Positions 21,732 through 63,935 of a stretch of DNA of 64,000 nt are shown here, piece after piece. The stretch spans positions 14,570,001-14,634,000 of the forward strand of contig CM068756.1 in NCBI GenBank assembly GCA_035084275.1. The letters are read 5' to 3'. Both the position numbers and the translations under genes were made by a program. The notes beneath the pieces were generated by a model. It saw only the letters and a program-made list of their open reading frames with translations, searched no databases and was not told where the DNA came from. Within the stretch, counting starts at the first letter, position 1, and each line of letters opens with the position of its first letter. This DNA comes from Hydrolagus colliei. Lineage: Eukaryota.

Positions 21732-21786
21732 ATGATGGCAAGTGTTGTTTTCCAGCTTCTGTGTCTCATTGAGATACTTTCAACAG
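21732..21786 (+). CDS. Gene B, leader exon
   Basis: MMASVVFQLLCLIEILST+G followed by GTTTGT; 55 nt, phase 1. Confidence 0.82.
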
Positions 21787-21964
21787 GTTTGTGTTTAGCT
21801 TATATCCAAATGTGTTTAAAAATATGGATATATTACTTTCCATCAATTTCCAGTACAGAAATATCTATATTTATCTTCTTGTATCTCTCTCTCATAAAAA
21901 ATTTCACTTTGTTTAGCTCCAACTTTATGTTTAAGCAATCCGTGTTCAAATATATCTTTGACAG

Positions 21965-22279
21965 TTATTGGCAGCCCTTTGACCCAACATCCAGGGCTCC
22001 GGACTCCAATTCGTGGCGCAAACATCACCTTCTACTGCATCTTTTCTGAAGCTCCAAAAAGTATACGTATAAAGGTGTACTGGTGGAAGCGAGGAGAGAG
22101 TGAATACCTACAAACAAAAGAGGACAAAAGGAAAATTTTTGGTGTGGAACATGGAAGAGGCGGGGCCTACTTCCATCTCCTTGATGTGAGAATCCAGGAT
22201 TCAGGAGTCTATCACTGCGCATTGAGCCGTGAGGGTATAATAGTGGGCAATGGCACTGGATCACATCTAACTGTCTATG
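21965..22279 (+). CDS. Gene B, VJ-type V exon
   Basis: 315 nt, tttgacAG/GTAAGT; VIGSPLTQHPGLRTPIRGANITFYC...VYWWK...QDSGVYHC...GNGTGSHLTVY. Confidence 0.92.
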
Positions 22280-23050
22280 GTAAGTGTGTACACAGTCCAG
22301 ATCGTGGTTTGGGTACTTACATATAACAAACTAACTTAAACAAATCTTAATAATAATTCCTCAAAAACCCCCACGAAAATCATTTGGTCACTCAATCCAT
22401 GACTGTTTGTGGGAAACTGCTTCGCGCAATTAGCTGCCGCATTTTGCCCACAAATATACAGTCAATTCGCTTTACACTATATTATGTGAAGCATTTTGAG
22501 AAATCTAGAAGATGTGAAATGTGCTATATCAAATGCAATTAATATTATCCATATATTCTATTAAGTACTTTCAGACTCTAGAAGATGTGTAAAGTGCTAT
22601 ATCAAATGCAAGAATTGTTATTACAAATATAATATTGTGAGTCTTGAATAACACAACTTCAATGCGCCGATTTACTCTGTCTAACATTTTACAATGCGGC
22701 ATTGCTAATGTTACAATGAAAACATTGAAAACCAAATGTTATTAAAGCTTATCAATTTGTCCTTCATTAGTGCCATCATATGCAATCCCAACTGAAGTTG
22801 TTTTCATAGGGCGATAAAATGTAGTTTCTCAACAGTTGTCTATTCCATGTATAAGTGTCTATTCTGATTAAAATCGACTATTTTCAATGTTAAACCGATG
22901 AACGAATCAAGCGCATCAGTTGAAAATGTATGTTTACTGCTCCAAGGATTTTCATTGTCAACCAATTTCCATGTGACTGTCTGGGAGATATCTTTAGTCG
23001 CGTTAATTGCATTCAAGTAATGTGATTCTCCTTCTTTGTTTGTTCCACAG

Positions 23051-23359
23051 TTTCTCCAACTTCACCGAAGATTTCCCGCAGGGTTGTTGGAGATGAATCT
23101 GAAACTCTGGCTCTTGTGTGTGAAACAGCCGGGTTTTACCCCGAGAATCTCAACCTCACTTGGTATAAAAATGGCATTGAAATTACAACTGGAATAAATA
23201 CTACTAACAAGCAGAGTTTGGATGGATTGTATGAAGCTTCGAGCTCTGTGGTAGAGACACTGGCTGTTCGGAACGGTGTTGTTTATACCTGTCAGATATC
23301 ACATCTCAGTTTACAGACTCCAATCATTGCCAACTACACTGTTGTTCTTCCTGACATGG
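23051..23359 (+). CDS. Gene B, C1 exon
   Basis: 309 nt, ttccacAG/GTAGGT; LVCETAGFYPENLNLTWYKNG...DGLYEASSS...YTCQISHLSL. Confidence 0.92.
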
Positions 23360-23371
23360 GTAGGTTATCAA

Positions 23372-23668
23372 TAATAATAATCCTTGCATTTGACACAGCA
23401 CTTTTCACATCTTCTGGATGTCTCAATGTGCTTCACAGAATATACTGTAAAGTGAAGTGACTGTAAATTTGTGGGCGAAAAGCGGTAGCCAATTGCGCGA
23501 AGCAGTGTCCCACAAACAATGAATAAGCAATTTAAAAATATATATATTTTAGGGATTAATATTAGGTGTGTGGAGGCACTAAGGAAACATGCCCAAGGTT
23601 TTGCCTTGAATTGAACACAGGTTTCACACTTGTGAGGCGAGTGCTCTAACCACTGAGCTACAGCAGGA
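23372..23668 (-). mobile_element. tRNA-derived SINE, near full length
   Basis: Head, body and (att)n L2-like tail. Similar copies lie at about 24255-24562, 28090-28398, 39457-39810, 42045-42356 and 56365-56600. Confidence 0.7.
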
Positions 23669-26355
23669 GATGTGTCGGAATATATTACAATGCAATTCCA
23701 AAAAGGAAAATACACTTATATACCTGCTTTCACGTCGGGTTGACCACAGCCTTCAGCATTCAATGAATAGTCATTGTACAGTTTTATAGCTCATGAGAAA
23801 CTTGAAGGATTATGTACCTTCCGTATCTCTAGTATATATTTATATATACGTTTTAGAATCACTTTATGGAAGAGTCTATTGTAGAATAAAGCTAAATTTA
23901 TATTGTTTTTACTGAAACATTTCTGCAAACTATTGAAGAAATAAACATGGGCGAGGTTGTCTCCAGTTCAATGAAGACACAATATCAACAATATTATCAG
24001 TAAATTTAGAATCACTGGTTGTAGTATAGAAGCAGTGTGTGTGGAAACCAGTTCCTAAAATGGACAATGTTATCATGGAGATTGAATTAATGTACTGTAT
24101 TATTTCAGAATGATATTTAGATAGAATGTGAATTATTTGTGTTATATAAATTAGGTATACTACTTTTAAGCAATACCACTATGACTAGAAGTGAATTATT
24201 GTGTTGCTAGTTTAAGTATGATTAGTTTAAGCTAATTATGAAAGCTGTTTTAATACTGTAATAATAATTCTTGCATTTGGTATAGCACTTTACAACTGTT
24301 CTAGAGGCCGCAAAGTGCTTCACAGAATATACTAAAACTAATTGACCGTGTATTTGTGGGCAAAACACCGCAGCCAATTGTGAACAGCAGTGTCCCACAA
24401 ACAATCGGGAATTGTGATGACAAATTTATTATTGTTTAATTCTTGAGGGATTATTATCATGTGTGTGGAGTAAGGAAACTTGCCTACCGTTTCGCCCTAC
24501 CTGGAATTGTATCTGAGTCTCTTGCTTGCAAGGCGAGTGCTCTAATTACCGAGCTACAGGATTCTACGATTCCACGTTTCAATAATGATCAGATGAAAGT
24601 GTGTACTCCATAGCATATTTAGATGATTTGCAGATCATATTGTTTTAATTATCTTGTGCTGAGTTCCAGAAAATCTACGTAGGTACACGTGACAAGTGTT
24701 ACAGCGTGACTAGAAACATTTTAGATTAGAAAATCTCAGTATATTTGGCTTTGAATAGCTTAATTTGGCAAGAAGAAATAATTTTTTTGTAGCAAAAATT
24801 TGTTGTGCTACTTGTTGATTGATTGCTTCCCTCACTCTCTGGATCTCCATCCCACAGTTTATCTCTCTCCCCCCGCCCCCACCTTGCCTCCTTAAAGGCA
24901 CAAATCATGCTGCTACACTTTGACCATGCCTTCGATCGCCCTGCAACCTGCCTGATTCCTACGCTGAGATCGCGTCCAAAATCACAAAATTTGTTTAGCA
25001 CCTTTCACATTGGGAGGACCTCCCTAGGCACTGGACAGATAATATTCCAGACCCAACCTGAAGGTAGGAATTGGTGAGATCGGAGGGCAGATGGAGGGAA
25101 GGAGATCAATCAAAAGCACAGTCAAATTGGAGAGTCTTGAGGTTGGAGGCAAGGGATGGATCGAGGTGGAGGGATTGTGCGATATGCGGGACTTTGAAAT
25201 GCTGTCAGTCCGGCATATTGGGACCATCAGCTGATGTGAAATGCGCGATATAAATGTAATTTAGTTGTTGTTGACATACTGTCCGACATTGTTAGGCTAT
25301 ATCAAAATAAAATTCACAATTCAGATTGCACATCTACAGAACAACTGTATCTGAGTCAGCCCAAAGGTGTCCAGCTTCCCCGGTAGCCTAATCAATTAGA
25401 TATCATTTGGATGGGTGAGGACTTGCGGACCTTAACTGAATAAAACCAGGGAACCAGGATATAATGCACAACTAAGCTGTAACTTGTCAGCTCGAGTCCT
25501 CAATTTGAGTTGTTGTGGGAGCAAGCACATCTCTATGCTTCACCCAGGCCGAACTCCAACTTCAGGTCCTGCGACTCAAGCTATACGGATGTCCAAAATT
25601 ATCACTAACAACAGCAGAGAAAAGAAGAGTTGGATGATACAAGGACACAGCTGCAAGGTCACTGTTACCAAACAGCAGAAGTTCATCTGTTGCCCTTGAA
25701 CTCTAATATTTTCATCAGATTCAAATCTGAGCATAACATCATTCTATTACCTATTACGATCCTCCTTATTGAATCCATGCAAAAGCTTTTGCCACAGTAA
25801 GTAAAATAAGTAAATTAGCTAGGAACCATAAAATAGAAGAGATGCTGCTTTCTCTAGTTCCTACGGTTATATTTTGTCTTTCTATATTTTCTGGATGCAC
25901 CTTTTTTCTCAGGTTTCAATAGAGTGGTGAAAGCCACTGCTGGCTGCAGCTTCAAATCCAAAGTCTGAAATGATAAAAATAACTATGTGCACTATGTGAC
26001 CTAGGTGCACATCAGTAAGATATATTGTTGCATCTTGTGGTTTAAATGCAAACTAAGATCACTCAAGATGTGCCATTTAATGTGTTGCGCAATGATTAAA
26101 GCATTGGTTAAATTACAGAAATGGTATTGATTCCAAAATGTTTTAGCAACCGATTTCAGCAAATTGAAGTTTGTCATTCTTCTAAGTATCTCAGCGTTAA
26201 TAATTCAGCAACTGTGTAAATTCAGAAGTACATTTAGTTTTCAGTTGTTAGTACTGTAACATTAATACTATGGTAGAAGATTTATATTCATCTTAATAGT
26301 TACCAACGTTTGCATTTAGAAAGGAATAATTAAGTTTTTAGATTAATTGCTGAAT

Positions 26356-27153
26356 CATAGAATCATAGAATCATAGAATTTTACGGCACAAAAGGAGGCC
26401 ATTCGGCCCATCTAGTCTGTGCCGGCTCTTTGAAAAGAGCGATTCAATCCCACTGCCCTGCCCGCTCCCCATAGCCTAATAGACCCGTTCTCCCTAAATA
26501 AAGATCTAATTCCCTTTTAAAAGTTGTTATCGAATCAGCCTCCACCACCTTTTCAGGCAATGCATTCCAGATTCGAACAACTCGCTGAGTGAAACAATTT
26601 CTCCTCAGCTCCCCTCTACTGCGCCTTGAAACTATTTTAAATCTGTGACCACGAGTCACAGATTCACCCACGAGTGGAAATAGTTTTTCTCTATTTGCCC
26701 TGTCGAAACCCCTCATGATCTTATAAACCTCTATTAGGTCTCCCCTCAATCTTCTCTGCTCCAGAGAGAATAACCCTAGCCTATCTAGCCTCTCCTCATA
26801 GCTGAAGTCCCTCAATCCTGGCACCATCCTAGTAAATCTTCGTTGTACCCTTTCCAATGCCTTCACATCCTTTCTGTAGTGTGGTGACCAGAATTGAACA
26901 CAGTATTCCAGCTGAGGCCTCACCAAAGTCCTATAGAGGTTAGTCAGCACTTCCTGACTTTTGTACTCTATACCCCTATTTATAAAGCCTAGTATCCCAT
27001 ATGCCTTCTTAACAGCCTTGTCTACAGCCTTGTCTACCTGTCCTGCCACCTTCAACGAGTCACTAACACAAATCCCCAGGTCTCTCTGTTCCTTTACACC
27101 ATTTAAAATTGTACTATCTAGCCTATATTGCCTCCCTTCATTTCTTCTCCCAA
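26356..27153 (-). mobile_element. 5'-truncated CR1 LINE (RT C-terminus + (ctatgatt)n tail)
   Basis: ORF 26444-27055 contains LVRPQLEYCVQFWSPHY...LERVQRRFTRMVPGL; absent at the homologous site of gene C's intron (about 41545). Confidence 0.92.
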
Positions 27154-28537
27154 TATATATTTTAAAAGAATATATAATTCTTTTAAAAATGTGTAATTAA
27201 CGGACATTAAAAACTGTGATGACACTTGTGTTCTCACTAAGAAAATGATCCTCTTGCGACATCCTATCACAGCATGGTTCAATTGGTAGCACTCTCAGCT
27301 CTGAGTTAACAGGTTTAAGCCACACCATCCACGCAGAGCTGACAGTGTACTGCATTGTTGGAGGTGCTATTTGCAGACCTTCAACCAGGAACCCTTCTCC
27401 ATGTTGAGGTGGTCGATATGGATCCCATGGTATGCAAAGTACTGGAAAATCGAAGCGAATTTCTCCAAGTGTCACAGGCACCCAAAACAAAATAAACAGA
27501 CAAAATAAAACTGGTCATTCCTTTCATGTTGGTTTGTGACAATAACAATCCTTGTATTCATGGGACATGGATGTGTGTTATTGGCCTGCTGCATCTGCAA
27601 TTACACAGTCACTTAATTTCATAGTAAATTTCATGGAATGTGAAACACTTTGAGATGTTCCACGGACGTATAATAATAATAATACTAATAATCCTTGCAT
27701 TTGATAAATTGCTTTTCACATCTTCTAGACATCTCAAAGCACTTCACAGAATATACTGTACTGTGAAGTCAATTGACTGTATATATTTTGTTGGCGAAAC
27801 GTGGCAGCCAATTGTGCACAGCAGTGTCCGACAAACAGTGATGGATTGAAGTCATTGATTTTTTTTTGGTGAGGGATTATTATTCACAGGCACAGGCACC
27901 CAAAACAAAATAAACAGACAAAATAAAACTGGTCATTCCTTTCATGATGGTTTGTCATAATAACAATCCTTGTATTTATGGGACATGGATGTGCGTTATT
28001 GGACTGCTGCATTCGCCTCCAATTACACAGTCACTTCATTTCGTAGTAAATCATGTGAAGCATTTTAAGATGTTCCACTAAATTAACATAAATAATAACA
28101 ACAATAATGCTTGTATTTGATATAGTGCCTTTCACATCTTCTAGACATCTCAAAGCACTTCACGGAATATAGTGTGAAGTCAATTGACTCCATATATTTT
28201 ATGGGCGAAACACGGCAGCCAATTGCGCACAGCAGTGTCCCACAAACAGTGATGGATTAACTAATTCCTTCTTTTTTTTGGTGAGGGAATATTATTAGAG
28301 GTGTATAGAGTCAGGAAACTTGCCAAAGGTTTCACGCTGTCCGGAATTGAATCCAGGTCTCTCAATTGTGAGACAAGCGCTCTAACTGCCGAGCTACAAT
28401 ATAAATCATGCAGACTCCACAACGTAATGAAAGGAGTTCAGATAGATCCTCACTCTATCTATTAAATATTGACTGTGTTGCAGTTGAATGACTCCAGTTA
28501 CAAAGCACAGCCTCATGATTCTGTCCTCACTTCACAG

Positions 28538-28641
28538 AAATTGACTACAAATTTGTAATTTGCCGGTTCACATTATGCATGTGTCTTATACTGGTTTTGG
28601 TGATCATCACGGTGGACCATTTCAGAAATTTGCCCCTTTAA
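28538..28641 (+). CDS. Gene B, TM exon with stop
   Basis: ttcacAG, phase 1: EIDYKFVICRFTLCMCLILVLVIITVDHFRNLPL*; TAA AG|GTAAGG. Completes a 260-aa ORF. Confidence 0.82.
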
Positions 28642-28759
28642 AGGTAAGGAATTCCTTTCTTTTTAGCCACTTTTGTCTTAAATTGATTGTATTTCCAGTG
28701 CTTAGTATAACAACAATAACAGTATGTTATTGTATGTGAACAGTATTCCTCATCTATAC

Positions 28760-29743
28760 GCTTCCTCTTGGGGATGTGATCCGCAGACATGGGCACACTT
28801 CCACATGTAGGCGGATGACACCCAACTCTATCTCTCCACTTCACTTTGTGACCCCCAGTCCCCTGATGTTCTGTCAGCCTGCCTGTCAGACATCAGGGAC
28901 TGGATGAGCACAAATTTCTTGCAGCTGAATGTTAACAAGACGGAGGCGATACTCCTCGGCTCTCGTCAACGTCTCCATTCTCACGGCTCTCACCTCCTCC
29001 ACCTTCCCGGCCTGCCCCTAAACCTCTCCGAACTTGTGCGAAACCTTGGCATCAGGTTCGACCCCCAACTGTCCTTCCTCCCACACATCCGGTCCTTCAC
29101 CAGCACTGCCTTCTACCACCTCCGACGGATCGCCCGTCTCCAGCAATACCTCACTTTAAAAGCCACTGAAACCTTGGTCCACGCCTTCGTCACCTCTCGG
29201 CTGGAGTATTGCAATGCCCTCCTCGCCGGTCACCGCTCCACCACAATCCACAAAATCCACCTTATCCAAAACTCTGCCGCCCGCAAACTCACCTGCTCTA
29301 AGCTTCGCTCCCCCATTACCCCAGTCCTTGCCAGACTTCACTGGCTCCCTATCCCAGAGAGGATCGACTTCAAGATACTCACCCTTGTTTTCAAATCTCT
29401 CCACTCCTCTGCACCCCCCTATCTCTCTGATCTCCTCTCCCCCCAACCTAGCACCCGCTGCCTTCGTTCCTCTGGGTCTGGCCTCCTCCATGTCCCCAGA
29501 GTCCTCCGCTCCACCCTCGGCGGCCGTGCCTTTATCCACTATGCCCCGAGGCTCTGGAACTCCCTTCCTCACTCGCTTTGCCTCGCCCCCTCTCTTCCCA
29601 GTTTCAGGTCACAGTTGAAGACCTGAGTTTTTGGTCACCTTCCTGCCCCTGCCCCTGGCTCGGTCCCGTGATCTGCTACTTTGAAGCACTCTGAGACGTC
29701 GTCCGGCGTGGAGGGCGCTATATAAATAGAAGTTGTTGTTGTT
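28760..29743 (+). mobile_element. L2 LINE 3' portion (RT C-terminus + tail)
   Basis: *ADDTQLYLS (YADD mutated to TAG), ORF 28904-29626, tail gcgctatataaatagaagttgttgttg. Confidence 0.9.
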
Positions 29744-30586
29744 GTATGTACTTGTATAGCACCCTCTACGCCAGGTAGTATCTCAGAGCACTTAACATTG
29801 GCGTAGCCTGACTCTCCATGCATTGGTGTGGTGTGTGGGGGTAGCTTGGACATAAGCGCGGTCGGTGGGAAAAGTTTTCAGGTGGTACGTGAAAAAGGGG
29901 AAAGAGGTGGGCAATGCGTCACAAGCATGAGAACTATGTTCGAATCCAGGCAGATCAGGACAGAACCTTGGGCAAGTTTCCTTATTCCACATGCTTACGA
30001 AAAATACTTCAAAAAAAAACAAACAATAATAAAATTGGCCATTTCAATCCTGTGTGCAATTGGCTGCCACGTTTCACCCATAAATATATTGTCAATTCAC
30101 TTTATATTTCATTCTGTGAAGCGCTTTGAGGCGTCGATAAGATGTGAAAAGCACGATATCAAAAGCAAGGATTATTATTATATAATGCAGAGGTAGAGTC
30201 GAGGGAGAGAGGTAGAGTATTCCAGAGTATCAGGGCTAAAGTTACGTCCAGAATGAGATGTTTTGATCAATCCTGGTGTTTAATACTCAGAAACTCATCA
30301 CCATAATTCACACCTTTTACAAGAGAGATTTTGTTTTTGAGGTTCATAATTTGGTGCCAGTGGACTGGGGGAGTAATAATGTACTGCATTATAAATTATG
30401 AATTCAACACAAAAAAAGTGTTCCCACCTACTTCCCACCCATTTGAAGGACATTAATTACGAAAATGATGTCGACCTTGATATCGTAGAAATTATGTTAT
30501 TTCCTTAAATGGATAACCTAACAGGTCACCTGCTCTGAAAATTTAAGCAATAAACCTATTAATCACTTTGCCTTTCTGTTCCACAG

Positions 30587-31306
30587 GGATTATAAACCGA
30601 CGCTGGGTGTTTCATTGTTTAATGAATGTTGCCTTACAATCTGGAACGTCAACAAACCTTGAAACCCATTTAAATTGGACCATTATTATTTTGTGTGTTA
30701 CACAGCACAACCAGTGGTTTTATGTGCTGGCCAGATGTTTTTTTTTAGTCCAAAATATTTTAATGCTTCTGAATTGATCATGTGCAGTAATACATTACTT
30801 CAGTTATCACATTAATTCAGCCACACTTCTTAATTAACAATAGCAATGAGCTGTATGAAATTTGGGCCCCATGTAAGGAAACCAGAAGATTCCATGGGAT
30901 CTATAGATTGCAGTTTTTCATAATGCAACTGAAAAATAAAGTGGAATAGAACATGAATGGAACCAAGTATTGTATGATGAGAATGGTTATTATGCTGCAG
31001 TTTATCTCCAAACAAATGTGTCACGTTTCACATAAGGATAGATAAATATTGTACCCATGATAACTTCACCTGTACAGGTAAGTTAACAACCGTTGAATAA
31101 GTTACACCTGATGGATTTGTCAAATGTGAACAATAATGTACCAATACAGCTTTACAAACATTGCAACTTTTTTATTAGCACGTGTTGAATTTACATTGCA
31201 TGTTTACACTTTTACGTTGTCTCTGCAAATTTCTATTTAGCCTTGCATAATCTATTGTAGATTTTAAAGATGCTTTGATTAAATTTCTTCAATTGCATTT
31301 AATAAA
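30587..31306 (+). other. Gene B, putative non-coding terminal exon / 3' UTR
   Basis: Acceptor tttctgttccacAG conserved in C and X; AATAAA at 31301-31306. Confidence 0.5.
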
Positions 31307-32027
31307 ATATTGTGATCTTGACATGTATGAATCTTCTTGGAATACTTAGGATTTCATATGAAATGTAATCATGAGCAGACTTTTTTATGACAATTCCATT
31401 GTGATAACTAAAAAGAACTAATGCATGGTTATCAACAGCTATAGGGAAAACAGCTATAGGGCCACCCACATCGGCAGGACGCCTCACAGCGTTTCTCGGT
31501 GTTGGATGGGGACCGGTGGCAGGGTGACCATCGAGAGGTTCTGGAAGGAGGAAAGTTCTGGGTGACAGTCGAGAGGTGTAAGGAGGAAGAAACTTGACAA
31601 AAAGCGTGGGAAAGAGAAATATTTCAATTGAAACAATGGTAATTAGATCGCTGCAGTTTTTTGGGAGCGAAGTCAGGACAGCGGGGGGCAAAGCCAAGGT
31701 TTACCAGCACGATATAAAGCCGAGGCCAGGTCAGTCAGGTCGCAGATTCTCAAAAAATTACGTAGGCTACTCTCACTGAAACTCCCTTCCTCACTCCCTT
31801 CGCTTCGCCCCCTCTCTTCTTAGTTTCAGGTCTCAGCTGAAGACCTTTCTTTTTGACCGCACCTTCGGTCACCTTTTTCCCCCTCCCCCGGGCTTGGGCC
31901 TGGGATCCGTTATTGTGAAGCACTCTGAGATGCCGTCGTGGAGTGCGCTATATAAATTGAAGTTGTTGTTCTTGTGCACCTTGTTGTTGTGCACCTGATG
32001 TGCATGTTAACAGACAGGTTGGTCCAC

Positions 32028-33792: not shown

Positions 33793-33841
33793 ATGGGTGT
33801 TATTTTTCATTCTCTGTTTCTCATGGCAATACATTCTACAG
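33793..33841 (+). CDS. Gene C, leader exon
   Basis: MGVIFHSLFLMAIHST+G followed by GTGTGT; 49 nt, phase 1. Confidence 0.78.
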
Positions 33842-34042
33842 GTGTGTTTAGATTATATCTGCAATCTTCTGAATAATAATGTAAATATGATATGATAAAT
33901 TGTCAAACTGTAATTTTCTCCGTAATCACTTCCATTAATGTTTGATGAGTGAACAATGTCTTGTTATATGTTTTGCTCTACGTTTTTTCTTTGTATTCAT
34001 TTTACCATCTGTATAATCCTAGTTTGAAATTATTTCTGACAG

Positions 34043-34363
34043 TAACTGATGATACGTTGATCGAGGTAGTACAACAGCCCAAACATGGAATTTCAGTGGC
34101 AGGTGCAAACATCACCTTCAAATGCATTTTTGCTGTCCACCTCAATAACACACGCATAAAAGTGTATTGGTCAAAGCAGGGAGAGCATGGATGTCTGCAA
34201 GCAAAGGCAGATAACAGGAAAATATTTGGAGTTGAAGATGAAGGAATTTACTTCTTCCAGCTATTGGATGTGAACTTACAAGACTCTGGAGTATATTACT
34301 GTGAAGTGATCCGTGAGGGGAGAATCGCGGGAAATGGATCTGGGTCACGGTTAACTGTATGTG
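34043..34363 (+). CDS. Gene C, VJ-type V exon
   Basis: 321 nt, tctgacAG/GTATGT; VTDDTLIEVVQQPKHGISVAGANITFKC...VYWSK...QDSGVYYC...GNGSGSRLTVC. Confidence 0.9.
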
Positions 34364-34833
34364 GTATGTATGATTATATGGCAACTATTCCAATATTTAA
34401 ATATGACACTGATATTTCAGTGGAACAGAATTGTGATTTTATTTATTGTGATTTAATGCAACATAATTATGGCGTAACTAATTGTTGTAATTCCCTACCA
34501 TGAGTCTTTAAAATAGTTATCCCACACACATCATATCTTATTTCCCAGTTTAATGGTAATTACCAAATAGAATCGTCGTTGACTTCATTACTGTTTGCAG
34601 GAAATTTCTGTGTGTCAATTGGCTGCTTCATTTGCCTTCAAAATACAAACAGAGCATGTGTCACTAAAATCCCGTGAAGTGCTTTGAAACAATCCCCTAA
34701 AGTGAATGAACTTCTATGAAATGCAGGTATTCTTATTATTAGTATTATAGATTGCCACATATGTCAACCATCAAAAGGCATTTGACAAAGTGCCACATGA
34801 GAGACTTATTAGCAAATTAAAGGCCCATGGCAT

Positions 34834-35423
34834 TGTGAAGTTGTAATTTTTTACTCGTTCCCAGAACCGTTGTCTAACAAAAAGACCATACACCGTGGAT
34901 AAGGAAATGTAAAGTTTATTTGCAATAGCAAGAGCTGATTCTCAGAAGTCAACAGTCTCCAAGTAGAGTACCTGACAGTCAAAAGAATGAGCTGCCGGTG
35001 GTCAGTTAATGCAGCCTTTTTATACCCAAAAAGGCAGGGGTTTGCAGTACACACAAAGACAGTTACAAAAGTATTACCAATCACAGGGTTCCAACAACTA
35101 TTCGAATGGTGACATCACTCAATCCATGTCTCTCTAACAAAGTGAAATGTTAAAAACAAGCTTATCTCCAGATAGTGTCTAGTTTAGACAATGTCAAGGT
35201 TTGCTGGAGTTACTGTTTTCTGCCCCGTGAAATACTCAGATAAGGATGCGAGTGGCATTGTGCCAATCTGCATTTCCCAGGACCTGTCTTTTTCATTTTG
35301 TTAGTGGGCCAAAAGCACAGAAATTACATCTAGGCATAAAATGGCTAATTTCATATTTTGTTAGTGGGTTAAAAGTATAGAAGTTACATCTAGGTATAAA
35401 TGGCTAAATTTTACAATTTCACA
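34834..35423 (-). mobile_element. 3' LTR of an LTR retroelement
   Basis: Inverted termini TGTGAA(A/G)TTGTAA; PPT AAAAGGAGGGAA (rc 35424-35435) directly before it; TATAAAA (rc 35018-35024) and AATAAA (rc 34915-34920). Confidence 0.82.
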
Positions 35424-36622
35424 TTCCCTCCTTTTATCATATCCCATATGATAACAACAATTATTCATTTTTAATAATTATTTCATTTATCCCTTGCATT
35501 TCATTTTCCTCTTCCCAATATTTCCTGTCCTTTCTTACTTTTCGTTCTGCTAACTCTCTTTTTATTGTTTACTAGACCTTCTTTGAATACCAAGATACTG
35601 AGAGTTCTTTTAGTTCATTTATCACAATATTAGTTCTAATTAAATCATGAATTTGCATACAGCTTTGAATTCCAATAACCTTACACACTCCACCATAACT
35701 AACTCAGCCAGTTGATCACTTGGACATTGTCCAGAAGCAATGTCAAAACCAGACTATCTAAAGGCCAGAGTTGTAGGGAGTTGTTCGCCTCCCTTCTTTT
35801 CCCAGACCTTGAGATGGCTCTCCTGCTATTCACTTGGCAATTTCCCAAATGGGTACAATCCTTTGTGCCTTTGTTAATTGTTTCTCTCCCTTTTGCTCAA
35901 GGTTGCTGACTGTGCCTGTGTTGTGGATAGATTGTTTTAATTGGTGCCCGATTGGAACTAACTATAATTTTTAGTACAGTACCTCCATAACCCAACTTTA
36001 GTACAGTACCTCCATAACCCAACAGACCCCACCTTGAGAGTGAGAAAATACAATTTTTGATCTCTCACAACCGAACTACGCCTGTATTAATTTAGCAAGT
36101 TGTAAATCCCTTTTGTATCATTCATGCGCAGCCCTTGGCGTAAATAGCATGTTAGCAGAAAAGTATAAAATACCATAAGACATTGTAAAATCACAAAAAC
36201 ATAAGACATGAGAAGTACAGTTCAGAGCAAGACATGTGTAGTACAGTTCAGTACAATTAATTAAGCAGATTGATACAGTGGCTGTGATTAGGAATCGACT
36301 TTTTTTAAAAAAAACATAATACAGTTTGTGTTGATTGTAGAATATCTTCCTTTTTCCAAGAACGATTAGACTTGTCTTCTTTGTTCTCAAACTCAGACCT
36401 TTTTGGTCACACATCCAAATCTGTAGTGAGAAATTCAACAGCTCGTTTTGACCATTCACTGGTAAAATGTCCTTGAAAGTCCATAGAGTCCGTTTTGTTT
36501 CAGCAAACAAGTCCATGAGTCTTTAGAATTTCCTTTTTGGTCAATGTAAGACAAGACCAGAATGTCCAGTTCCCACCTCGAGTGGGTCAAACTGATTACC
36601 ATCATCATTATCAAAATCTTCA
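35424..36622 (-). mobile_element. Truncated internal region of the LTR element
   Basis: Contiguous with the PPT/LTR and foreign to the flanking CR1; no intact gag/pol/env ORF recognised. Confidence 0.55.
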
Positions 36623-38566
36623 AAAAGGGAAAGTGGCAGAGTGGATCCACAACTGGCTGCGAGACAGAAAGCAGAGAGTTGTAGTGAGCGGCTGTTTTTC
36701 AGACTGGAGGGAAGTGAGCAGTGGTGTGCCACAGGGATCGGTTTTGGGACCATTGCTCTTTGTAATCTACATCAATGATCTGGACTTGGGTGTAGGGAGT
36801 ACAGTTTCCAAGTTTGCAGATGACACTAAGTTAGGGAGAATAGTAAATAGTGAGGAGGATAGTAGCCATCTGCAAGAGGATATAGACAAATTGGTAAAGT
36901 GGGCAGTCACTTGGCAGATGAAGTTTAATGCAGAGAAGTGTGAGGTGATGCATTTTGGGAGAAGAAATGAAGGGAGGCAATATAGGCTAGATAGTACAAT
37001 TTTAAATGGTGTGAAGGAACAGAGAGACCTGGGGATTTGTGTTAATGACTCGTTGAAGGTGGCAGGACAGGTAGACAAGGCTGTTAAGAAGGCATATGGG
37101 ATACTAGGCTTTATAAATAGGGGTATAGAGTACAAAAGTCAGGAAGTGCTGACTAACCTCTATAAAACTTTGGTGAGGCCTCAGCTGGAATACTGTGTTC
37201 AATTCTGGTCACCACACTACAGAAAGGATGTGAAGACATTGGAAAGGGTACAAAGAAGATTTACAAGGATGGTGCCAGGATTGAGGGACTTCAGCTATGA
37301 GGAGAGTCTAGATAAGCTAGGGTTATTCACTCTGGAGCAGAGAAGATTGAGGAGAGACCTAATAGAGGTTTATAAGATCATGAGGGGTTTCGACAGGGCA
37401 AATAGAGAAAAACTATTTCCACTCGTGGGCGAATCTGTGACTCGTGGTCACAGATTTAAAATAGTTTCAAGGCGAAGTAGAGGAGAGCTGAGGAGAAATT
37501 TGTTCACTCAGCGAGTTGTTCGAATCTGGAATGCATTGCCTGAAAAGGTGGTGGAGGCTGATTCGATAACAACTTTTAAAAGGGAATTAGATCTTTATTT
37601 AGGGAGAACAGGTCTATTAGGCTATGGGGAGCGGGCAGGGCAGTGGGATTGAATCGCTCTTTTCAAAGAGCCGGCACAGACTAGATTGGCCGAATGGCCT
37701 CCTTTTGTGCCATAAAATTCTATGAATCTATGAATCTGACCAAAATAATCATTACAGTTGGTGGATTGTATTGCAATGCTGTTAAAAAAAGTTAAGGACA
37801 GTTTGAAACAGATCTTATTGACACTTAAACAACCTAAACCTTCATTTGCCCCCATTAGCTAGATTAACAGCCACAAACTCCACTTAGCAAGGCTTGAAAT
37901 TTCTGTATGTCACCCAGCCATTCTCGACTTCAGTCTCACTATCCTCACTCTTTAGAACATCCATCCTATATCCATCCTATATCCATCCTTCTATTCGCTC
38001 CCTCTCTCGCCTCCTTCAAAGCATGTCTCAAGATGCTCCTTTTCAACCATGCTTTTGGTCAGCCTCCTATCCTCCCTGCCCTCCAACCCTCCTCAACACA
38101 ACTCACTGCACACCGGTCCAAATCCCTGACTGTTCAGTTCCTTGGGGCTTTCTCCCAAAATGAAAGGTACTATACAAATGTAATTTATTGTTGCTTGTTT
38201 TCTTTTATGGTATTAGAAACCATTATTATCATTCGGTGTTGGATGCACAATAAGCGCCAGCTTTTTAATCGGTATTTGTTTTTTTTACTTCTTTATGAAT
38301 TATAATAGAAATACTATAATTAGTATAATAATTAATATGCAACAATAATTGTAATATATTATAATAAATTTTATGAACTTGTTTAGTAACTAGTCAACTC
38401 TCTATGAGTCCAAATTTTCATTTTTAAAGTGATTTGTAATTCAAAGCTATATTGCTAACATAAATACAAAATCAAAGTATTGCAAGAGATATTAATTAGC
38501 TACCATCAGAATAGTTCGTTCCCCAATCAAGTCTTATATGATTCTGTTGCATTATATGTTCTACAG

Positions 38567-38884
38567 TTCTTCCAACTCCGCTACGGATAATCCATATAAT
38601 TTCCGAAAAATATTCATCTGCTTCGCTGCTTGTGTGTAAAACAGCCGTATTTTACCCCAGGGGTCTCATCTTTAATTGGTATAAGAATGGGACCACAATT
38701 TCAACTGGGATAAATACTACTGAACAACAGAATCCAGATGGCCTGTACGAAGCATCAAGTTCTGTCGAGTTGGCACAGAGTATCCAGAGAGGGACTGTTT
38801 ATACTTGCATGGTATCTCATCTCTATGGTATCAGCCTCCGGACTGAAGGAATTGCGAACTACACGATTTCTCTTCCTGACAGAG
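38567..38884 (+). CDS. Gene C, C1 exon
   Basis: 318 nt, tctacAG/GTAACA; LVCKTAVFYPRGLIFNWYKNG...DGLYEASSS...YTCMVSHL. Confidence 0.88.
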
Positions 38885-41800: not shown

Positions 41801-42495
41801 TGGTATGCAAAGTACTGGAAAATAGAAGCGAATTTCTCCAAGCGTCACAGGCACCCAAAACAAAATAAACAGACAAAATAAAACTGGTCATTCCTTTCAT
41901 GTTGGTTTGTGACAATAACAATCCTTGTATTCATGGGACATGGATGTGTGTTATTGGCCTGCTGCATCTGCAATTACACAGTCACTTCATTTCATAGTAA
42001 ACTTCATGGAATGTGAAACACTTTGAGATGTTCCACGGATGTATAATAATAATAATACTAATAATCCTTGCATTTGATAAAGTGCTTTTCACATCTTCTA
42101 GACATCTCAAAGCACTTCACAGAATATACTGTACTGTGAAGTCAATTGACTGTGTGTATTTTGTGGCCGAAACGTGGCAGCCAATTGTGCACAGCAGTGT
42201 CTCACAAACAGTGATGGATTGAAGTGATTGATTTTTTTTTGGTGAGGGATTATTATTAGGCATGTAGAGTAAGGAAACTTGCCCAAGGTTTCACACTGTC
42301 TGGAATCAAGTCAGGTCTCTGGGTTGTGAGGCAAGTGCTCTAACTGCCGAGCTACAAAATAAAACATGCAGACTTCACAACACAATGGAAGGCGTTCAGG
42401 CAGCTCCTCACTCTATCTATTAAATATGGCCTGTGTTTCAGTTCAATGACTCTAGATGCAAAGTACAGCCTCATGCCTCTGTCCTTACTTCACAG

Positions 42496-42608
42496 AATTT
42501 GGCTACGATTCGCATTATGTGAACAGACTACGGTTCGCAACATGCGTGTTTGCTATAGTGTTTTTGGTGATCATCACTGTGGACCATTTCAGAATTTTGC
42601 CTCTTTGA
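42496..42608 (+). CDS. Gene C, TM exon with stop
   Basis: ttcacAG, phase 1: EFGYDSHYVNRLRFATCVFAIVFLVIITVDHFRILPL*; TGA AG|GTAAGG. Completes a 266-aa ORF. Confidence 0.82.
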
Positions 42609-54203: not shown

Positions 54204-54332
54204 GAGCGACTTTCAGCCCTCGCGTTAATGCACATTCATTATAATATGGAAATCGATATTGGTAGAGCGGTTGACGTATTGGCTTCAAAGCGACCGAGGC
54301 GTCTCGAATACGGAACGCTATTAAAGAATTAA
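54204..54332 (+). pseudogene. hAT transposase C-terminal dimerisation-domain remnant
   Basis: ERLSALALMHIHYNMEIDIGRAVDVLASKRPRRLEYGTLLKN*. Confidence 0.75.
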
Positions 54333-61047: not shown

Positions 61048-61102
61048 ATGATGGCAAGTGCTGTTTTTCAGTTTCTGTCTCTCATTGAGATACTTTCCAC
61101 AG
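61048..61102 (+). CDS. Gene D, leader exon
   Basis: MMASAVFQFLSLIEILST+G followed by GTTTGC; 55 nt, phase 1. Confidence 0.8.
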
Positions 61103-61283
61103 GTTTGCGTTTAGCTTCTACCTAAATGTTTTTAAGAATATGGGTACATATGTTCAATTAATGTACAGCAAAGAAGTCACTATATTTATCTTCTTGTATC
61201 TCTCTCTCTCGTTAGTTTCTGTTTACTTTGTTTATCTCCATCTTTATGTTTAAGCAATCCATGTTCAAATATATCTTTGACAG

Positions 61284-61598
61284 TTATTGGCAGCCCTTTG
61301 ACCCAACATCCAAAGCTCCGGACTCCAATTCGTGGCGCAAACATCACCTTCTACTGCATCTTTTCTGAAGCTCCAAAAAGTATACGTATAAAGGTGTACT
61401 GGTGGAAGCGAGGAGAGAGTGAATACCTACAAACAAAAGAGGACAAAAGGAAAATTTTTGGTGTGGAACATGGAAGAGGCGGGGCCTACTTCCATCTCCT
61501 AGATGTGAGAATCCAGGATTCTGGAGTCTATCACTGCGCATTGAGCCGTGAGGGTATAATAGTGGGCAATGGCACTGGATCACATCTAACAGTCTATG
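61284..61598 (+). CDS. Gene D, VJ-type V exon
   Basis: 315 nt, AG/GTAAGT; identical to gene B V except G>K (5 nt differences). Confidence 0.92.
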
Positions 61599-61956
61599 GT
61601 AAGTGTGTACACAGTCCAGGTCGTGATTTGGGGTACCTACATACAACGTAAAAAAATGCAGAATATTTATACGTACTTTTTAAGTAATTCATAAATTTTG
61701 TTACCTATGTACAGTAAAATACAATGAGACTTGCATAACAGAGGACACGAGTTCAACGCATCAATTTACTCTGTCTAATATTTCACAATGCGGCATTGTT
61801 TATCTTACCAATGACAACATTGAAAGCCAATTGTTACTAAAATATGTAAAACTCGTTAGCAATCCCAGCTGATGGTGTTTCTGAGGGGCGATAAGATGTA
61901 GTTCTCAGCGGTGGTTGTGTAAATGTGTGAATGTTTCTTGCGATTAAAACCAAATA

Positions 61957-62331
61957 CAGTAGAAGCCCGTTTATCTGTGACCCGATTAACCAGATTGCTC
62001 GACCCTCTCCCAGGGCAATTCCCCATTCCCCATTCCAGCAATCGCAAGTATGCTCAAATTAACTTATTAAACTTACAAACTTTGAGGGTTTTTTTACCGA
62101 TTTTTTACCATGCGTGCTGAAATCTTTATTGGTAAGTAGCTATACAATATTCTGTTACTATTTAGTATATTATTAATATAGTATGTTTTAAAATAAGTAA
62201 TTTTTTTGTGTTGGGTTTTCATTAACTTGACCCCTGATTATCTGGCACAGTTAATTGGTTGACACCCCCATCCCTCTCCCCCACCCCGCCCCACTCCCCA
62301 CTGAGAGTGCCGGATAAACGGGCTTCTACTG
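61957..62331. mobile_element. pogo/Tigger-like MITE
   Basis: Perfect 19-bp TIR CAGTAGAAGCCCGTTTATC; TA on the left, TG on the right; absent from gene B's homologous intron. Confidence 0.85.
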
Positions 62332-62564
62332 TGTTTTCAACTTTAAACTTTCATTCCTTAAGTATTGTCATCAAGTTTCCAATTAACACGTGTTGGAGGG
62401 CTCCGGCAGGTCTCCATCGATGAATGAAACAGATCAGTTTAAAATGTGCATTTACTGTGGATTTGTATTATTAATTAATTTCCATATGATTATCTGGGAG
62501 GCGTCTTATCGCTATTTTAACTTCTGTTATTTGCATTGAAGGAATCCTTTGTTTTTTTCCACAG

Positions 62565-62873
62565 TTTCTCCAACTTCACCGAAGATTTCCCGCAGGGTCG
62601 TTGGAGATGAATCTGAAACTCTGGCTCTTGTGTGTGAAACAGCCGGGTTTTACCCCGAGAATCTCAACCTCACTTGGTATAAAAATGGCACTGAAATTAC
62701 AACTGGAATAAATACTACTAACAAGCAGAGTTTGGATGGATTGTATGAAGCTTCCAGCTCTATGGTAGAGACACAGGCTGTTCAGAACGGTGTTGTTTAT
62801 ACCTGTCAGATATCACATCTCAGTTTACAGACTCCAATCATTGCCAACTACACGGTTGTCCTTCCTGACACGG
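62565..62873 (+). CDS. Gene D, C1 exon
   Basis: 309 nt, AG/GTAGGT; 9 nt / 5 aa differences from gene B C1. Confidence 0.92.
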
Positions 62874-63821
62874 GTAGGTTATCAATAATATACTCTCAAT
62901 TAGATTTAATTACATTCCTACAGGAATATTTCATTGCACCCATTCATACCACAAAGTATCATCAAATAATTTGCGAGAAGTATTTTTGAAATCTATTTAA
63001 TGTAAGAAGTTTTAAATTGTCATTATACGAGCTACGTCAGAATATATTACTATGCAAGTAAAAAAAAGTTTATATACCTGCTATCACCTCTGGTTGATGA
63101 CCATCTCAACAAAACACCCAATATTCAAATTACAGATTACAAGGTGCTAAGATTACATGAGTAATTTGAAGAATAAATATTATGGACTATCCATAGAATC
63201 ATTTTTTCTGTTTGTTTGCGAATAAAGATGAGTATTTTAATAGTATCTTACCACTTGATTTCCTTGTGACAATTTTTTAATGCGGATATTGTTGTCATAC
63301 TTTCCAGGTCTCTGTTAGTTGTGTGCTTTTTCTGATGTTGACAGTTAATTTCACTCTGGTCAGGGCTAGTATCAGGATCTCAGCCTCTGCAAAGAAGTGC
63401 TGAAGGTTTCAGCGTTTTACTGTACTGGGTAGTGAAGGAAAATATGATTCAAAAGAGTTTGCATACACGAGGATGGAAGCTATTACAGTAGCTACAAATA
63501 TCTGCCCCTCTGAAAAATAATTAACTGCAGTACTTCAATAATTACATATTAATCTCCATTCATGTTCAGCTATATTGTTATTGCTATGAAAGGGAGGACT
63601 AATTTAATTTATTATTTGAGGCCGGAAAGCCGCATTCCATAGATAAGGTCACAGGAAAAGAATGATGATTTCCAATAGAATAAATTGTCACGCTTACATA
63701 AAAACATTCATTCTGCATTGTTCAGCTCCTGAAACGAAAGATGATTACAGTGCTTGGAAAATAAGTGAATTACATGCTCAATATGGTGCAACTTCATTGC
63801 TTGGTTTTATCATTCGTTTAG

Positions 63822-63935
63822 ATCTCATTGCTCTGTTCCATTATTTAAAAATCGCTGGATATGCAGGAGGTGCGTTTGCATTTCTGCTGCTTCTCATTCT
63901 CATTGCAAAGCGAAGCCACCTAAGGAAAAAGACTG
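63822..63935 (+). CDS. Gene D, TM exon (open into downstream cytoplasmic exons)
   Basis: cgtttAG, phase 1/1, GTAAGT donor: DLIALFHYLKIAGYAGGAFAFLLLLILIAKRSHLRKKT; no stop. Confidence 0.82.

What the first reader, a model, noticed from the sequence alone, without database searches (positions are those of the whole stretch)
21732..63935. Genes B and D look like a paired receptor: same ectodomain, unrelated signalling ends
Seen: V differs by 1 aa and C1 by 5 aa. B's TM exon has a conserved Arg and stops after a tail of about 8 residues, whereas D's TM exon is non-homologous and continues in frame past KRSHLRKK into exons outside the window. Established: shared ectodomains with short charged-TM versus long-tail partners define activating/inhibitory pairs (KIR, Ly49, SIRP, PILR, NITR). 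Inference: B activates via an ITAM adaptor and D may be the inhibitory partner.
Basis: partly seen in the sequence, partly recalled or inferred. Interest (0 to 1): 0.8.

Follow-up and report, generated by a model that had tools for sequence, protein, structure and literature searches.

The report
Paired SIRP-like receptor genes in a chimaera
Two linked immune-receptor genes of a cartilaginous fish have almost identical outer (ligand-binding) parts, kept alike by gene conversion, but opposite membrane and tail modules, which is the classic design of an activating/inhibitory receptor pair, here in a SIRP-like family.

Summary
Genes B (21732-28643) and D (61048-63935 and beyond) encode leader-V-C1 ectodomains that differ by 1 aa in V and 5 aa in C1.

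B ends in a separate exon, EIDYKFVICRFTLCMCLILVLVIITVDHFRNLPL*. It has an Arg in the membrane span and an 8-residue tail. D's transmembrane (TM) exon is unrelated, uncharged, followed by KRSHLRKK, and ends in a phase-1 donor 65 bases before the window ends.

The genes belong to a chondrichthyan V-C1 family that RefSeq names "SIRP-alpha-like" or "tapasin-related-like". D is the collinear orthologue of Callorhinchus milii XP_007902824, whose 149-residue tail carries ITIM-type tyrosine motifs arranged as in human SIRP-alpha. B's R-(17 residues)-D-H membrane module is conserved in chimaeras and sharks.

B and D are old duplicates. Their introns are as diverged as those between the two species (about 27%). 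The V and C1 exons, plus 8-22 bases on each side, are 97-98% identical, also at synonymous sites. This is exon-limited gene conversion. B's 3' half is shared with gene C, not D.

Not shown: D's own tail, expression, adaptor binding and ligand. This is a well-supported new member of a known kind.

The parts
21732..21786 (+). Gene B, exon 1: ATG and signal peptide (MMASVVFQLLCLIEILST), phase-1 donor
   Evidence: The exon is 90.7% identical to D's leader, with 3 aa differences.
21965..22279 (+). Gene B, V exon (V-set Ig domain with J-like GNGTGSHLTV motif)
   Evidence: Pfam V-set/Ig_3. AG acceptor and GT donor. 310/315 nt identical to D.
23051..23359 (+). Gene B, C1 exon (C1-set Ig domain)
   Evidence: Pfam C1-set E=2e-12. 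300/309 nt identical to D.
28538..28643 (+). Gene B, last coding exon: transmembrane helix with Arg, then DHFRNLPL and stop (TAA 28639-28641). A GT donor follows, so a 3'-UTR exon is expected downstream.
   Evidence: In phase with C1. 64.5% identical to the C-terminus of Callorhinchus P0004. 74% identical to an R-TM exon in Callorhinchus locus L002 346-426. AlphaFold helix at residues 212-239 of the mature protein.
61048..61102 (+). Gene D, exon 1: ATG and signal peptide (MMASAVFQFLSLIEILST)
61284..61598 (+). Gene D, V exon
62565..62873 (+). Gene D, C1 exon (has an NGT sequon where B has NGI)
63822..63935 (+). Gene D, TM exon: (D)LIALFHYLKIAGYAGGAFAFLLLLILIAKRSHLRKKT + G of a split codon, with a gtaagt donor. 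The cytoplasmic exons lie beyond base 64000. An upstream in-frame acceptor at 63726 is possible but is not conserved.
   Evidence: The acceptor TTTAG| aligns with the one used by the Callorhinchus XP_007902824 model, whereas the upstream AG is absent there. tblastn to the TM exons of ITIM-tailed relatives gives E=5e-4 to 8e-5.
21943..22300 (+). High-identity tract B~D around the V exon (partner 61262-61619): 5 differences in 358 bases, bounded on both sides by 20-30% divergence
   Evidence: Difference map; synonymous-site test.
23043..23375 (+). High-identity tract B~D around the C1 exon (partner 62557-62889): 9 differences, with sharp boundaries 8 bases before and 16 bases after the exon
24606..31798 (+). 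Gene B's 3' half (pre-TM intron, R-TM exon, conserved 3' module). It is collinear with gene C's 39869-44975 at 76-95% identity and unrelated to D.
   Evidence: The same module lies upstream of the D orthologue in Callorhinchus (L002 217-3273).
33793..42610 (+). Gene C, lying between B and D: leader 33793-33841, V 34043-34363, C1 38567-38884, R-TM exon 42496-42610 (EFGYDSHYVNRLRFATCVFAIVFLVIITVDHFRILPL*). This is a second activating-type gene. Its ectodomain is only about 55% identical to that of B and D.

Best explanation
B and D are an activating/inhibitory receptor pair of a chondrichthyan SIRP-like V-C1 family.

Shown:
- The two linked, same-strand genes encode ectodomains that are 97% identical.
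- B joins this ectodomain to an ancient, conserved membrane module. It has Arg near the outer end of the helix, Asp-His exactly 17 residues later at the inner end, and a tail of a few residues.
- D joins the same ectodomain to an uncharged helix with a basic stop-transfer stretch and a phase-1 donor. This is the module that, in its Callorhinchus orthologue and in most relatives, leads into a long tail with several ITIM-type tyrosines arranged as in SIRP-alpha.
- B and D are old duplicates. Their V and C1 exons alone have been re-homogenised by gene conversion.
- B is a mosaic, with a D-like 5' half and a C-like 3' half.

Inferred:
- On binding the same ligand, D recruits SH2 phosphatases through its phosphorylated tail and dampens the cell.
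- B pairs through its Arg with an Asp-bearing ITAM adaptor and activates the cell. From the depth of the Arg, the adaptor is more likely of the FcR-gamma/CD3-zeta type than DAP12.
- Conversion keeps the activating copy's binding face in step with the inhibitory one. This is expected if the pair balances a self ligand or counters a pathogen that exploits the inhibitory receptor.
For: Ectodomain identity and intact gene structure:
- 310/315 nt (V) and 300/309 nt (C1) are identical, with 1 and 5 aa changes. All splice sites are canonical and in phase.

Family:
- 28 chondrichthyan proteins hit at E<=1e-28; 74 hits at E<=1e-30 among 1.84 billion representatives.
- Pfam finds V-set plus C1-set. The best solved relative by sequence is SIRP-alpha 2wng, E=2e-20.
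- The AlphaFold model has pLDDT 88 and an antibody-light-chain-like V-C1 fold plus a TM helix.

Orthology of D:
- P0029/P0168 (Callorhinchus XP_007902824) is 67% identical, with TM SPYLLIAGYAGGGLAFLVLIIIIAKGSQLRKMRG and an ITIM-rich tail.
- Locus L002 11368-12750 aligns with window 62547-64000 at 75.8%, and the acceptor is conserved.
- After C1, D is 80-84% identical to Callorhinchus, while B is 50-64%.
- In the tree, (B,D)+P0168 has support 100/99.

Conservation of the R-TM module:
- It is found in B, C, Callorhinchus P0004 and L002 346-438. It is also found in Heterodontus, Heptranchias, Carcharodon, Chiloscyllium (two species) and Scyliorhinus. The R-to-D/E spacing is always 17.

Gene conversion:
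- Synonymous divergence between B and D is 0.048, against 0.23-0.25 to Callorhinchus.
- Intron 2 divergence between B and D is about 0.28, equal to the between-species value.
- The tracts are bounded within 8-22 bases of the exons.

Family-wide reshuffling:
- Tail type changes at least 8 times for 9 R-TM genes on the ectodomain tree.
- 37 or more relatives carry TM plus ITIM.
Against: - D's cytoplasmic exons are not in the window. A minority of TM-bearing relatives, including Callorhinchus P0002, show no canonical ITIM, although several of those are truncated models.
- There is no transcript evidence for either gene. B's C1-to-TM intron is 5.2 kb and full of SINE/LINE insertions.
- No adaptor was examined. 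Whether holocephalans have FcR-gamma or DAP12 was not tested here, and one 2014 survey placed the origin of FcR-gamma in bony fish (PMC4016189).
- The conserved Asp-His at the inner end of B's helix has no counterpart that I know of in mammalian activating receptors, so the partner could be something else.
Confidence: 0.75

Rival explanations
1. B and D are simply very recent tandem duplicates. B's 3' end was replaced once, and the near-identity of the ectodomains reflects youth, not gene conversion or selection for a pair.
For: The proximal upstream region and intron 1 are also fairly similar (83-85%). B and D are sister sequences in the tree.
Against: Intron 2 is as diverged between B and D (72% identity) as either copy is from Callorhinchus (72-79%). 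Identity jumps from about 75% to 98% within 8-22 bases of the exon borders. Synonymous divergence is five times lower than between the species. A young duplication would leave the introns alike as well.
Confidence: 0.07
2. B is a decaying or non-signalling copy. The R-TM exon is not used, or it yields only a membrane-anchored or soluble decoy with no adaptor, so there is no activating arm.
For: Neighbouring genes show that decay occurs in this array. Gene A has lost the R-TM exon. A pseudo-V (13635-13961) and a degenerate TM flank (18960-19089) remain. There are no expression data, and the intron is loaded with transposable elements.
Against: B's reading frame, four exons and all splice sites are intact. 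The Arg and the Asp-His, 17 residues apart, are kept from chimaeras to sharks, which argues for constraint on exactly these charged residues. Gene conversion keeps the exons in step with D.
Confidence: 0.12
3. D is not inhibitory. Its unseen tail is short, or it carries other motifs (for example activating or endocytic ones), so B and D differ in anchoring but not in the sign of their signal.
For: 24 TM-bearing relatives in the sample lack a canonical ITIM, among them Callorhinchus P0002 with a D-like TM. The tail is outside the window.
Against: The collinear orthologue has five tyrosine motifs, including VSYATL and MTYATL. 37 or more relatives with this TM type have ITIMs. The donor and the first 65 intron bases after D's TM exon are about 88% conserved with Callorhinchus, which suggests the downstream exons are still in use.
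Confidence: 0.06

Closest known systems
Callorhinchus milii XP_007902824 (RefSeq 'tyrosine-protein phosphatase non-receptor type substrate 1-like', 406 aa; P0029/P0168)
   Same: It is the orthologue of D and the co-orthologue of B's 5' half. Protein identity is 67%. The DNA is collinear through C1, intron 3 and the TM exon. The four-exon leader-V-C1-TM layout and the acceptor are the same.
   Different: It comes from a different species, with synonymous divergence about 0.24. Its full ITIM tail is visible, whereas D's is not. Whether it has a B-like partner is unknown. The gene just upstream of it ends in an R-TM exon 74% identical to B's, but its ectodomain could not be fetched.
Mammalian SIRP-alpha / SIRP-beta pair
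   Same: - A membrane-distal V domain with a J-like motif is followed by C1-set domain(s). SIRP-alpha is the best solved sequence match.
- The family's long tails align with the four-tyrosine SIRP-alpha tail.
- An inhibitory member and a short-tailed member with a basic TM residue share nearly identical ectodomains.
   Different: - There are two Ig domains here, not three.
- B's basic residue is Arg near the outer end plus a conserved Asp-His. SIRP-beta, as I recall it, has a mid-membrane Lys that binds DAP12, so the activating module probably arose independently.
- Orthology to the tetrapod SIRP locus and CD47 binding were not tested.
KIR, LILR/PIR, Ly49, PILR, CEACAM1/3 and teleost NITR paired receptors
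   Same: The logic is the same: linked multigene cluster, shared ectodomain, charged-TM short tail versus ITIM tail, gene conversion or recombination between partners, and inhibitory forms outnumbering activating ones.
   Different: These are unrelated or only distantly related Ig (or lectin) families. NITRs have V plus I-type domains and are confined to bony fish, whereas these genes have a C1-set domain.
Short-tailed R-TM members of the same chondrichthyan family. Examples: Callorhinchus XP_007902896.1, Scyliorhinus XP_038662025, Heterodontus XP_067905015, Carcharodon XP_041048274.
   Same: They share the terminal module: R, 17 residues, D/E-H, and a short tail.
   Different: Their ectodomains are 36-57% identical to B's. 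Each groups with ITIM-tailed genes of its own lineage.
Non-rearranging VJ-C1 genes such as shark UrIg/UrIg2 and antibody light chains
   Same: They share the V(J)-C1 fold. UrIg2 (9dmx) is among the sequence hits, and light chains top the fold search.
   Different: UrIg is a secreted, multi-C-domain, antibody-like molecule (PMC12227049). B and D are two-domain membrane receptors with signalling modules.

Membership tests
Paired activating/inhibitory Ig-superfamily receptors (functional class) | Two separate, linked genes with nearly identical ectodomains | tested here: met
   The ectodomains are 97% identical at the protein level. The genes lie 39 kb apart on the same strand.
Paired activating/inhibitory Ig-superfamily receptors (functional class) | The activating member has a basic residue in the TM helix and a very short cytoplasmic tail | tested here: met
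   B: FVICRFTLCMCLILVLVIITV, then DHFRNLPL and stop. A helix is predicted there.
Paired activating/inhibitory Ig-superfamily receptors (functional class) | The inhibitory member has a long tail with ITIM/ITSM | tested here: inconclusive
   D's tail lies beyond base 64000. D has the TM type of ITIM-bearing relatives, and its collinear orthologue has VSYATL, MTYATL, TEYAQL and others.
Paired activating/inhibitory Ig-superfamily receptors (functional class) | The activating member associates with an ITAM adaptor; the inhibitory member recruits SHP-1/2 | not testable with these tools
   This needs co-expression and co-precipitation experiments.
Paired activating/inhibitory Ig-superfamily receptors (functional class) | Both members are expressed and share a ligand | not testable with these tools
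   No transcript or binding data were available.
SIRP family (SIRP-alpha/beta/gamma) | N-terminal V-set domain with a J-like G-x-G motif, followed by a C1-set domain | tested here: met
   Pfam finds V-set and C1-set. The GNGTGSHLTV motif is present. SIRP-alpha is the top PDB sequence hit.
SIRP family (SIRP-alpha/beta/gamma) | Three extracellular Ig domains (V-C1-C1) | tested here: not met
   Each gene has only one C1 exon. D's C1-to-TM intron is 948 bases with no Ig exon, and the Callorhinchus orthologue is the same.
SIRP family (SIRP-alpha/beta/gamma) | SIRP-alpha-type tail with four tyrosines (two xTYAxLxL plus xEYAxxQ pairs) | tested here: inconclusive
D's own tail was not seen.
SIRP family (SIRP-alpha/beta/gamma) | The activating member has a mid-membrane Lys (the DAP12 type, as in SIRP-beta1; recalled from memory) | tested here: not met
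   B has Arg at about position 5 of the helix and Asp-His at its inner end.
SIRP family (SIRP-alpha/beta/gamma) | Orthology or synteny with the tetrapod SIRP locus; CD47 binding | not tested
Chondrichthyan SIRP-like V-C1 receptor family (RefSeq 'PTPNS1-like' / 'tapasin-related-like') | Significant full-length similarity over V and C1 to family members | tested here: met
   E=5e-65 to 1e-28 with 40-54% identity. E=1e-101 with 67% identity to XP_007902824.
Chondrichthyan SIRP-like V-C1 receptor family (RefSeq 'PTPNS1-like' / 'tapasin-related-like') | One of the family's two alternative terminal modules: R-17-D/E-H with a short tail, or an uncharged TM with a basic stretch and an ITIM tail | tested here: met
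   B and C carry the first module. D carries the start of the second.
Teleost NITR | V domain (with or without an I-type domain), no C1-set domain, bony fish only | tested here: not met
   The second domain is C1-set. The relatives are chondrichthyan.

The most novel reading that the evidence does not exclude
The SIRP-type inhibitory tail and a dedicated activating membrane module (Arg, 17 residues, Asp-His) already formed interchangeable cassettes in the common ancestor of chimaeras and sharks. In that case a SIRP-like paired-receptor system is as old as jawed vertebrates, not a tetrapod invention as a 2026 survey of IgSF families lists it (PMC13262535). The R...DH module would signal through a partner that is not one of the adaptor pairings known from mammals. 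Exon-precise gene conversion would be the mechanism that keeps each activating copy matched to its inhibitory partner.
Probability: 0.4. Interest if true: 0.65.

Novelty: new member of a known kind. Interest (0 to 1): 0.5.

Why it matters
Paired receptors are central to the control of innate immunity. How they arise and stay paired is mostly inferred from mammals and teleosts. This window gives a clean example from a chimaera, in one of the deepest-branching lineages of jawed vertebrates. Here the steps can be read directly from the DNA:
- an old duplication;
- a swap of the 3' signalling cassette (B shares it with C, not D);
- later gene conversion confined to the two ectodomain exons.

It also shows that a SIRP-alpha-like four-tyrosine tail and a conserved Arg/Asp-His activating module exist across cartilaginous fish. 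I found no paper describing this in the library searched, although RefSeq's automatic names hint at it. If confirmed at the bench, it would date the SIRP-like inhibitory/activating design to the base of gnathostomes and point to an adaptor pairing worth identifying.

Tried and rejected
- Word-index searches restricted to B's TM region, and to the Callorhinchus R-TM peptide, found nothing. Short hydrophobic regions give too few shared words. The exhaustive phmmer search found the R-TM relatives instead.
- I looked for ITIM or inhibitory-type TM exons belonging to genes A, B or C within the window, using PAM30 tblastn with seven relatives' tails, and found none. The only notable hit, IIYSQLDL at 62885-62908, is intron read-through next to D's C1 exon and is judged to be chance.
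- The long version of D's TM exon (acceptor 63726, 71 codons, with an odd hydrophobic SLLGFIIRL stretch) was rejected. Callorhinchus has no AG there, and its gene model uses the acceptor equivalent to 63822.
- I tried to identify the Callorhinchus gene just upstream of XP_007902824, which has a 302-aa product and ends in a B-like R-TM exon. P0004 is not on record. P0173 and P0174 map 150-230 kb away. Its ectodomain stays unknown.
- An assembly or haplotype artefact as the cause of the B~D identity was rejected. The copies have diverged introns and different 3' halves.
- Literature searches for SIRP-like or paired receptors in cartilaginous fish, and for shark ITAM adaptors, returned nothing specific. 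The UrIg papers concern a different VJ-C1 gene. PMC10530332 is not held.
- The fold search against PDB only returned antibody light chains, that is, the generic V-C1 fold. It does not discriminate between families.

Full report
WHAT THE WINDOW IS

The window is 64 kb of eukaryotic DNA (about 40% G+C, no N) that is rich in SINE/LINE debris. Translated searches show a tandem array of Ig-superfamily genes on the + strand:
- Gene A: V 7550-7870, C1 9517-9825. An inverted extra copy of its V lies at 683-1018.
- A pseudo-V at 13635-13961.
- Gene B.
- Gene C: V 34043-34363, C1 38567-38884.
- Gene D.

The closest proteins are all chondrichthyan. Non-coding DNA aligns over kilobases at 69-84% identity with Callorhinchus milii scaffold MU249845.1. 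Orthologous proteins are 67-74% identical. The source is therefore, by inference, a chimaera other than C. milii.

CHECKING THE OBSERVATION

Gene B has these exons:
- ATG and leader 21732-21786
- V 21965-22279
- C1 23051-23359

Gene D has these exons:
- leader 61048-61102
- V 61284-61598
- C1 62565-62873

All introns are GT..AG and phase 1.

The V exons differ at 5 of 315 bases, giving one amino-acid change (G->K, codon 11). The C1 exons differ at 9 of 309 bases, giving five changes. One of them, I43T, gives D an NGT sequon that B lacks.

B's last coding exon was located at 28538-28643 through its similarity to the C-terminus of Callorhinchus XP_007902896.1. It is in phase with C1. It reads EIDYKFVICRFTLCMCLILVLVIITVDHFRNLPL-stop.

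D's TM exon ends ...IAGYAGGAFAFLLLLILIAKRSHLRKKT plus one base of a split codon, followed by gtaagt, at 63935. The two TM exons are unrelated.

The only refinement concerns the start of D's TM exon. Two in-frame acceptors exist, at 63726 and 63822. Only the second aligns with the acceptor used in the Callorhinchus gene model, where the upstream AG is absent.

WHAT THE GENES ARE

Pfam finds a V-set and a C1-set domain. The V exon ends in a J-like GNGTGSHLTV. The best solved relative by sequence is SIRP-alpha (2wng, E=2e-20). An AlphaFold model (pLDDT 88) has an antibody-light-chain-like V-C1 ectodomain plus a membrane helix.

Relatives are RefSeq models named [quoted passage not shown], "tapasin-related protein-like" or "signal-regulatory protein beta-1-like". 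They come from elephant shark, sharks and rays.

The exhaustive search gave a much closer protein, Callorhinchus XP_007902824 (E=1e-101, 67% identity, 406 aa). Its TM, SPYLLIAGYAGGGLAFLVLIIIIAKGSQLRKMRG, matches D's. Its 149-residue tail carries VSYATL, MTYATL, TEYAQL, LTYVAP and AEYAEV.

At the DNA level, D is collinear with that gene from upstream through C1, intron 3 and the TM exon to the last base of the window (L002 11368-12750 versus 62547-64000, 75.8% identity). After C1, D is 80-84% identical to Callorhinchus, whereas B is 50-64%. D is therefore the orthologue of an ITIM-tailed, SIRP-alpha-like gene. In Callorhinchus the tail exons lie 1.7-5 kb past the TM exon, so in this species they lie just outside the window.

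THE ACTIVATING MODULE

B's terminal exon is not an oddity. Gene C has a copy at 42496-42610 (EFGYDSHYVNRLRFATCVFAIVFLVIITVDHFRILPL-stop). Callorhinchus has at least two:
- P0004.
- An exon 9.6 kb upstream of XP_007902824 that reads ...EFAICRFALCICVILLLVIVTVDHFRITSL-stop. It is 74% identical to B's exon.

Sharks also have it, in Heterodontus, Heptranchias, Carcharodon, two Chiloscyllium species and Scyliorhinus. In all of these genes the Arg is followed, exactly 17 residues later, by Asp or Glu and then His. One Heptranchias copy has Gln in place of Arg. This conservation of two charged positions in a membrane helix, across the depth of cartilaginous fish, argues for function.

In the sample of relatives, ITIM-tailed genes outnumber R-TM genes by roughly 37 to 8. 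On a tree of ectodomains the R-TM genes are scattered, each next to ITIM-tailed genes of its own lineage. Tail type changes at least 8 times for 9 R-TM genes. This is the signature of a paired-receptor family in which ectodomains and signalling cassettes are repeatedly recombined.

HOW THE PAIR AROSE AND IS MAINTAINED

The similarity between B and D is a mosaic:
- V exon: 98.4% identical.
- C1 exon: 97.1% identical.
- Proximal upstream region and intron 1: about 84%.
- Intron 2: about 72%.
- The first kilobase after C1: 56-64%, in patches.

A difference map shows two high-identity tracts, 21943-22300 and 23043-23375. They overshoot the exons by only 8-22 bases and are bounded by 20-30% divergence.

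Synonymous divergence in V plus C1 is 0.048 between B and D, against 0.23-0.25 between either copy and Callorhinchus. In intron 2, B, D and Callorhinchus are about equally distant from one another. Between the species, synonymous sites diverge about as fast as introns, so the low value between B and D is not due to constraint on synonymous sites. The duplication is thus roughly as old as the split from Callorhinchus, and the two ectodomain exons were homogenised much later by gene conversion.

From 24606 to 31798, B is collinear with gene C's 39869-44975 at 76-95% identity, including the R-TM exon. Their V and C1 regions are only 63% identical. B is therefore a hybrid, with a D-type 5' half and a C-type 3' half.

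MECHANISM (INFERRED)

D, like SIRP-alpha and its Callorhinchus orthologue, would be phosphorylated on its tail tyrosines and recruit SH2-domain phosphatases. B, with the same binding face, would pair through its Arg with an Asp-bearing ITAM adaptor.

The Arg lies about five residues into the helix from the outside. In mammals this depth is typical of partners of FcR-gamma/CD3-zeta rather than DAP12. This rests on my knowledge of those systems, not on a test. The role of the Asp-His is unknown.

Gene conversion keeps the activating copy's specificity locked to that of the inhibitory one.

COMPARISON WITH KNOWN FAMILIES

In function, the design is that of SIRP-alpha/beta, KIR, LILR, PILR, CEACAM1/3 and NITR pairs.

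As to membership, the genes belong to the chondrichthyan SIRP-like V-C1 family. They share the V-C1 start and, through the orthologue, the tail with mammalian SIRPs. They fail two SIRP features: they have two Ig domains instead of three, and the activating TM is of a different type. They are not NITRs, because the second domain is C1-set.

I found no paper on this family in the library searched. One 2026 survey lists the SIRP family as arising in tetrapods (PMC13262535).

WHAT REMAINS OPEN

- D's tail
- expression of both genes
- the adaptor and the ligand
- whether Callorhinchus has a B orthologue

On the last point, the gene upstream of XP_007902824 ends in a B-like R-TM exon, but I could not retrieve its ectodomain.

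VERDICT

This is a new member of a known kind, of moderate interest. Its value lies in how clearly the conversion and cassette-swap history can be read, and in the age of the two signalling modules.

Noticed in passing
window 52-1437 (-) and 7124-8511 (+): A 1.4-kb inverted duplication (95.7% identity) carries a second, minus-strand copy of gene A's V exon (683-1018). Its ORF is intact, but no C1 exon lies near it.
   Followed up: partly
window 7270-12889: Gene A (leader 7270-7318, V 7550-7870, C1 9517-9825) is the orthologue of the ITIM-tailed Callorhinchus P0007 (73% identity). It has no TM exon in the window. The conserved '3' module' that follows the R-TM exon elsewhere begins about 350 bases after its C1 (10171-12889 versus L002 515-3273). 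The gene is possibly secreted or decaying.
   Followed up: partly
window 13635-13961, 18960-19089, 19036-20917: These are remains of a further gene. There is a V exon related to that of B and D (78% identity), with an in-frame TGA and a missing first half. There is also the upstream flank of an R-TM exon without the exon itself, and the 3' module.
   Followed up: partly
window 33793-42610: Gene C's ectodomain is orthologous to Callorhinchus P0010/P0013 (72-74% identity), which have an inhibitory TM and ITIM tail 1 kb after C1 (locus L001). Here C carries an R-TM exon instead, and no ITIM exons were found. Orthologues in the two species therefore have opposite tail types.
   Followed up: partly
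L002 1-441 (Callorhinchus MU249845.1, about 15.63 Mb): The gene immediately upstream of the D orthologue ends in an R-TM exon 74% identical to B's. Gene order also differs between the species. In Callorhinchus the D orthologue lies upstream of the C orthologue, whereas in the window C lies upstream of D.
   Followed up: partly
window 62885-62908: Reading through D's C1 donor gives IIYSQLDL, which is 7/8 identical to an ITIM of Callorhinchus P0010. It is intronic and would be extracellular, so it is probably chance.
   Followed up: no
window 63936-64000: The first 65 intron bases after D's TM exon are about 88% identical to Callorhinchus. This is more than the neighbouring exon and far more than typical intron (about 73%). 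It may be a splicing element.
   Followed up: no
window 32301-32900; 48262-49919; 50580-50838; 18139-18290: Tandem arrays are present: a G-rich 28-30-bp unit; a 31/124-bp unit spanning 1.6 kb; a 40-bp unit; and a 50-bp unit repeated three times. They account for the strong GC-skew swings at 32-34 kb and 48-52 kb.
   Followed up: no
window 26447-27196 (-), 28811-29623 (+), 36519-37649 (+); more than 25 sites such as 22404-22548 and 23374-23518: LINE fragments are present (Pfam RVT_1 E=2e-15 for 36519-37649), along with an abundant SINE-like element of about 150-300 bases. One copy abuts B's C1 donor exactly where the homology between B and D ends. The same element family is present in Callorhinchus.
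   Followed up: partly
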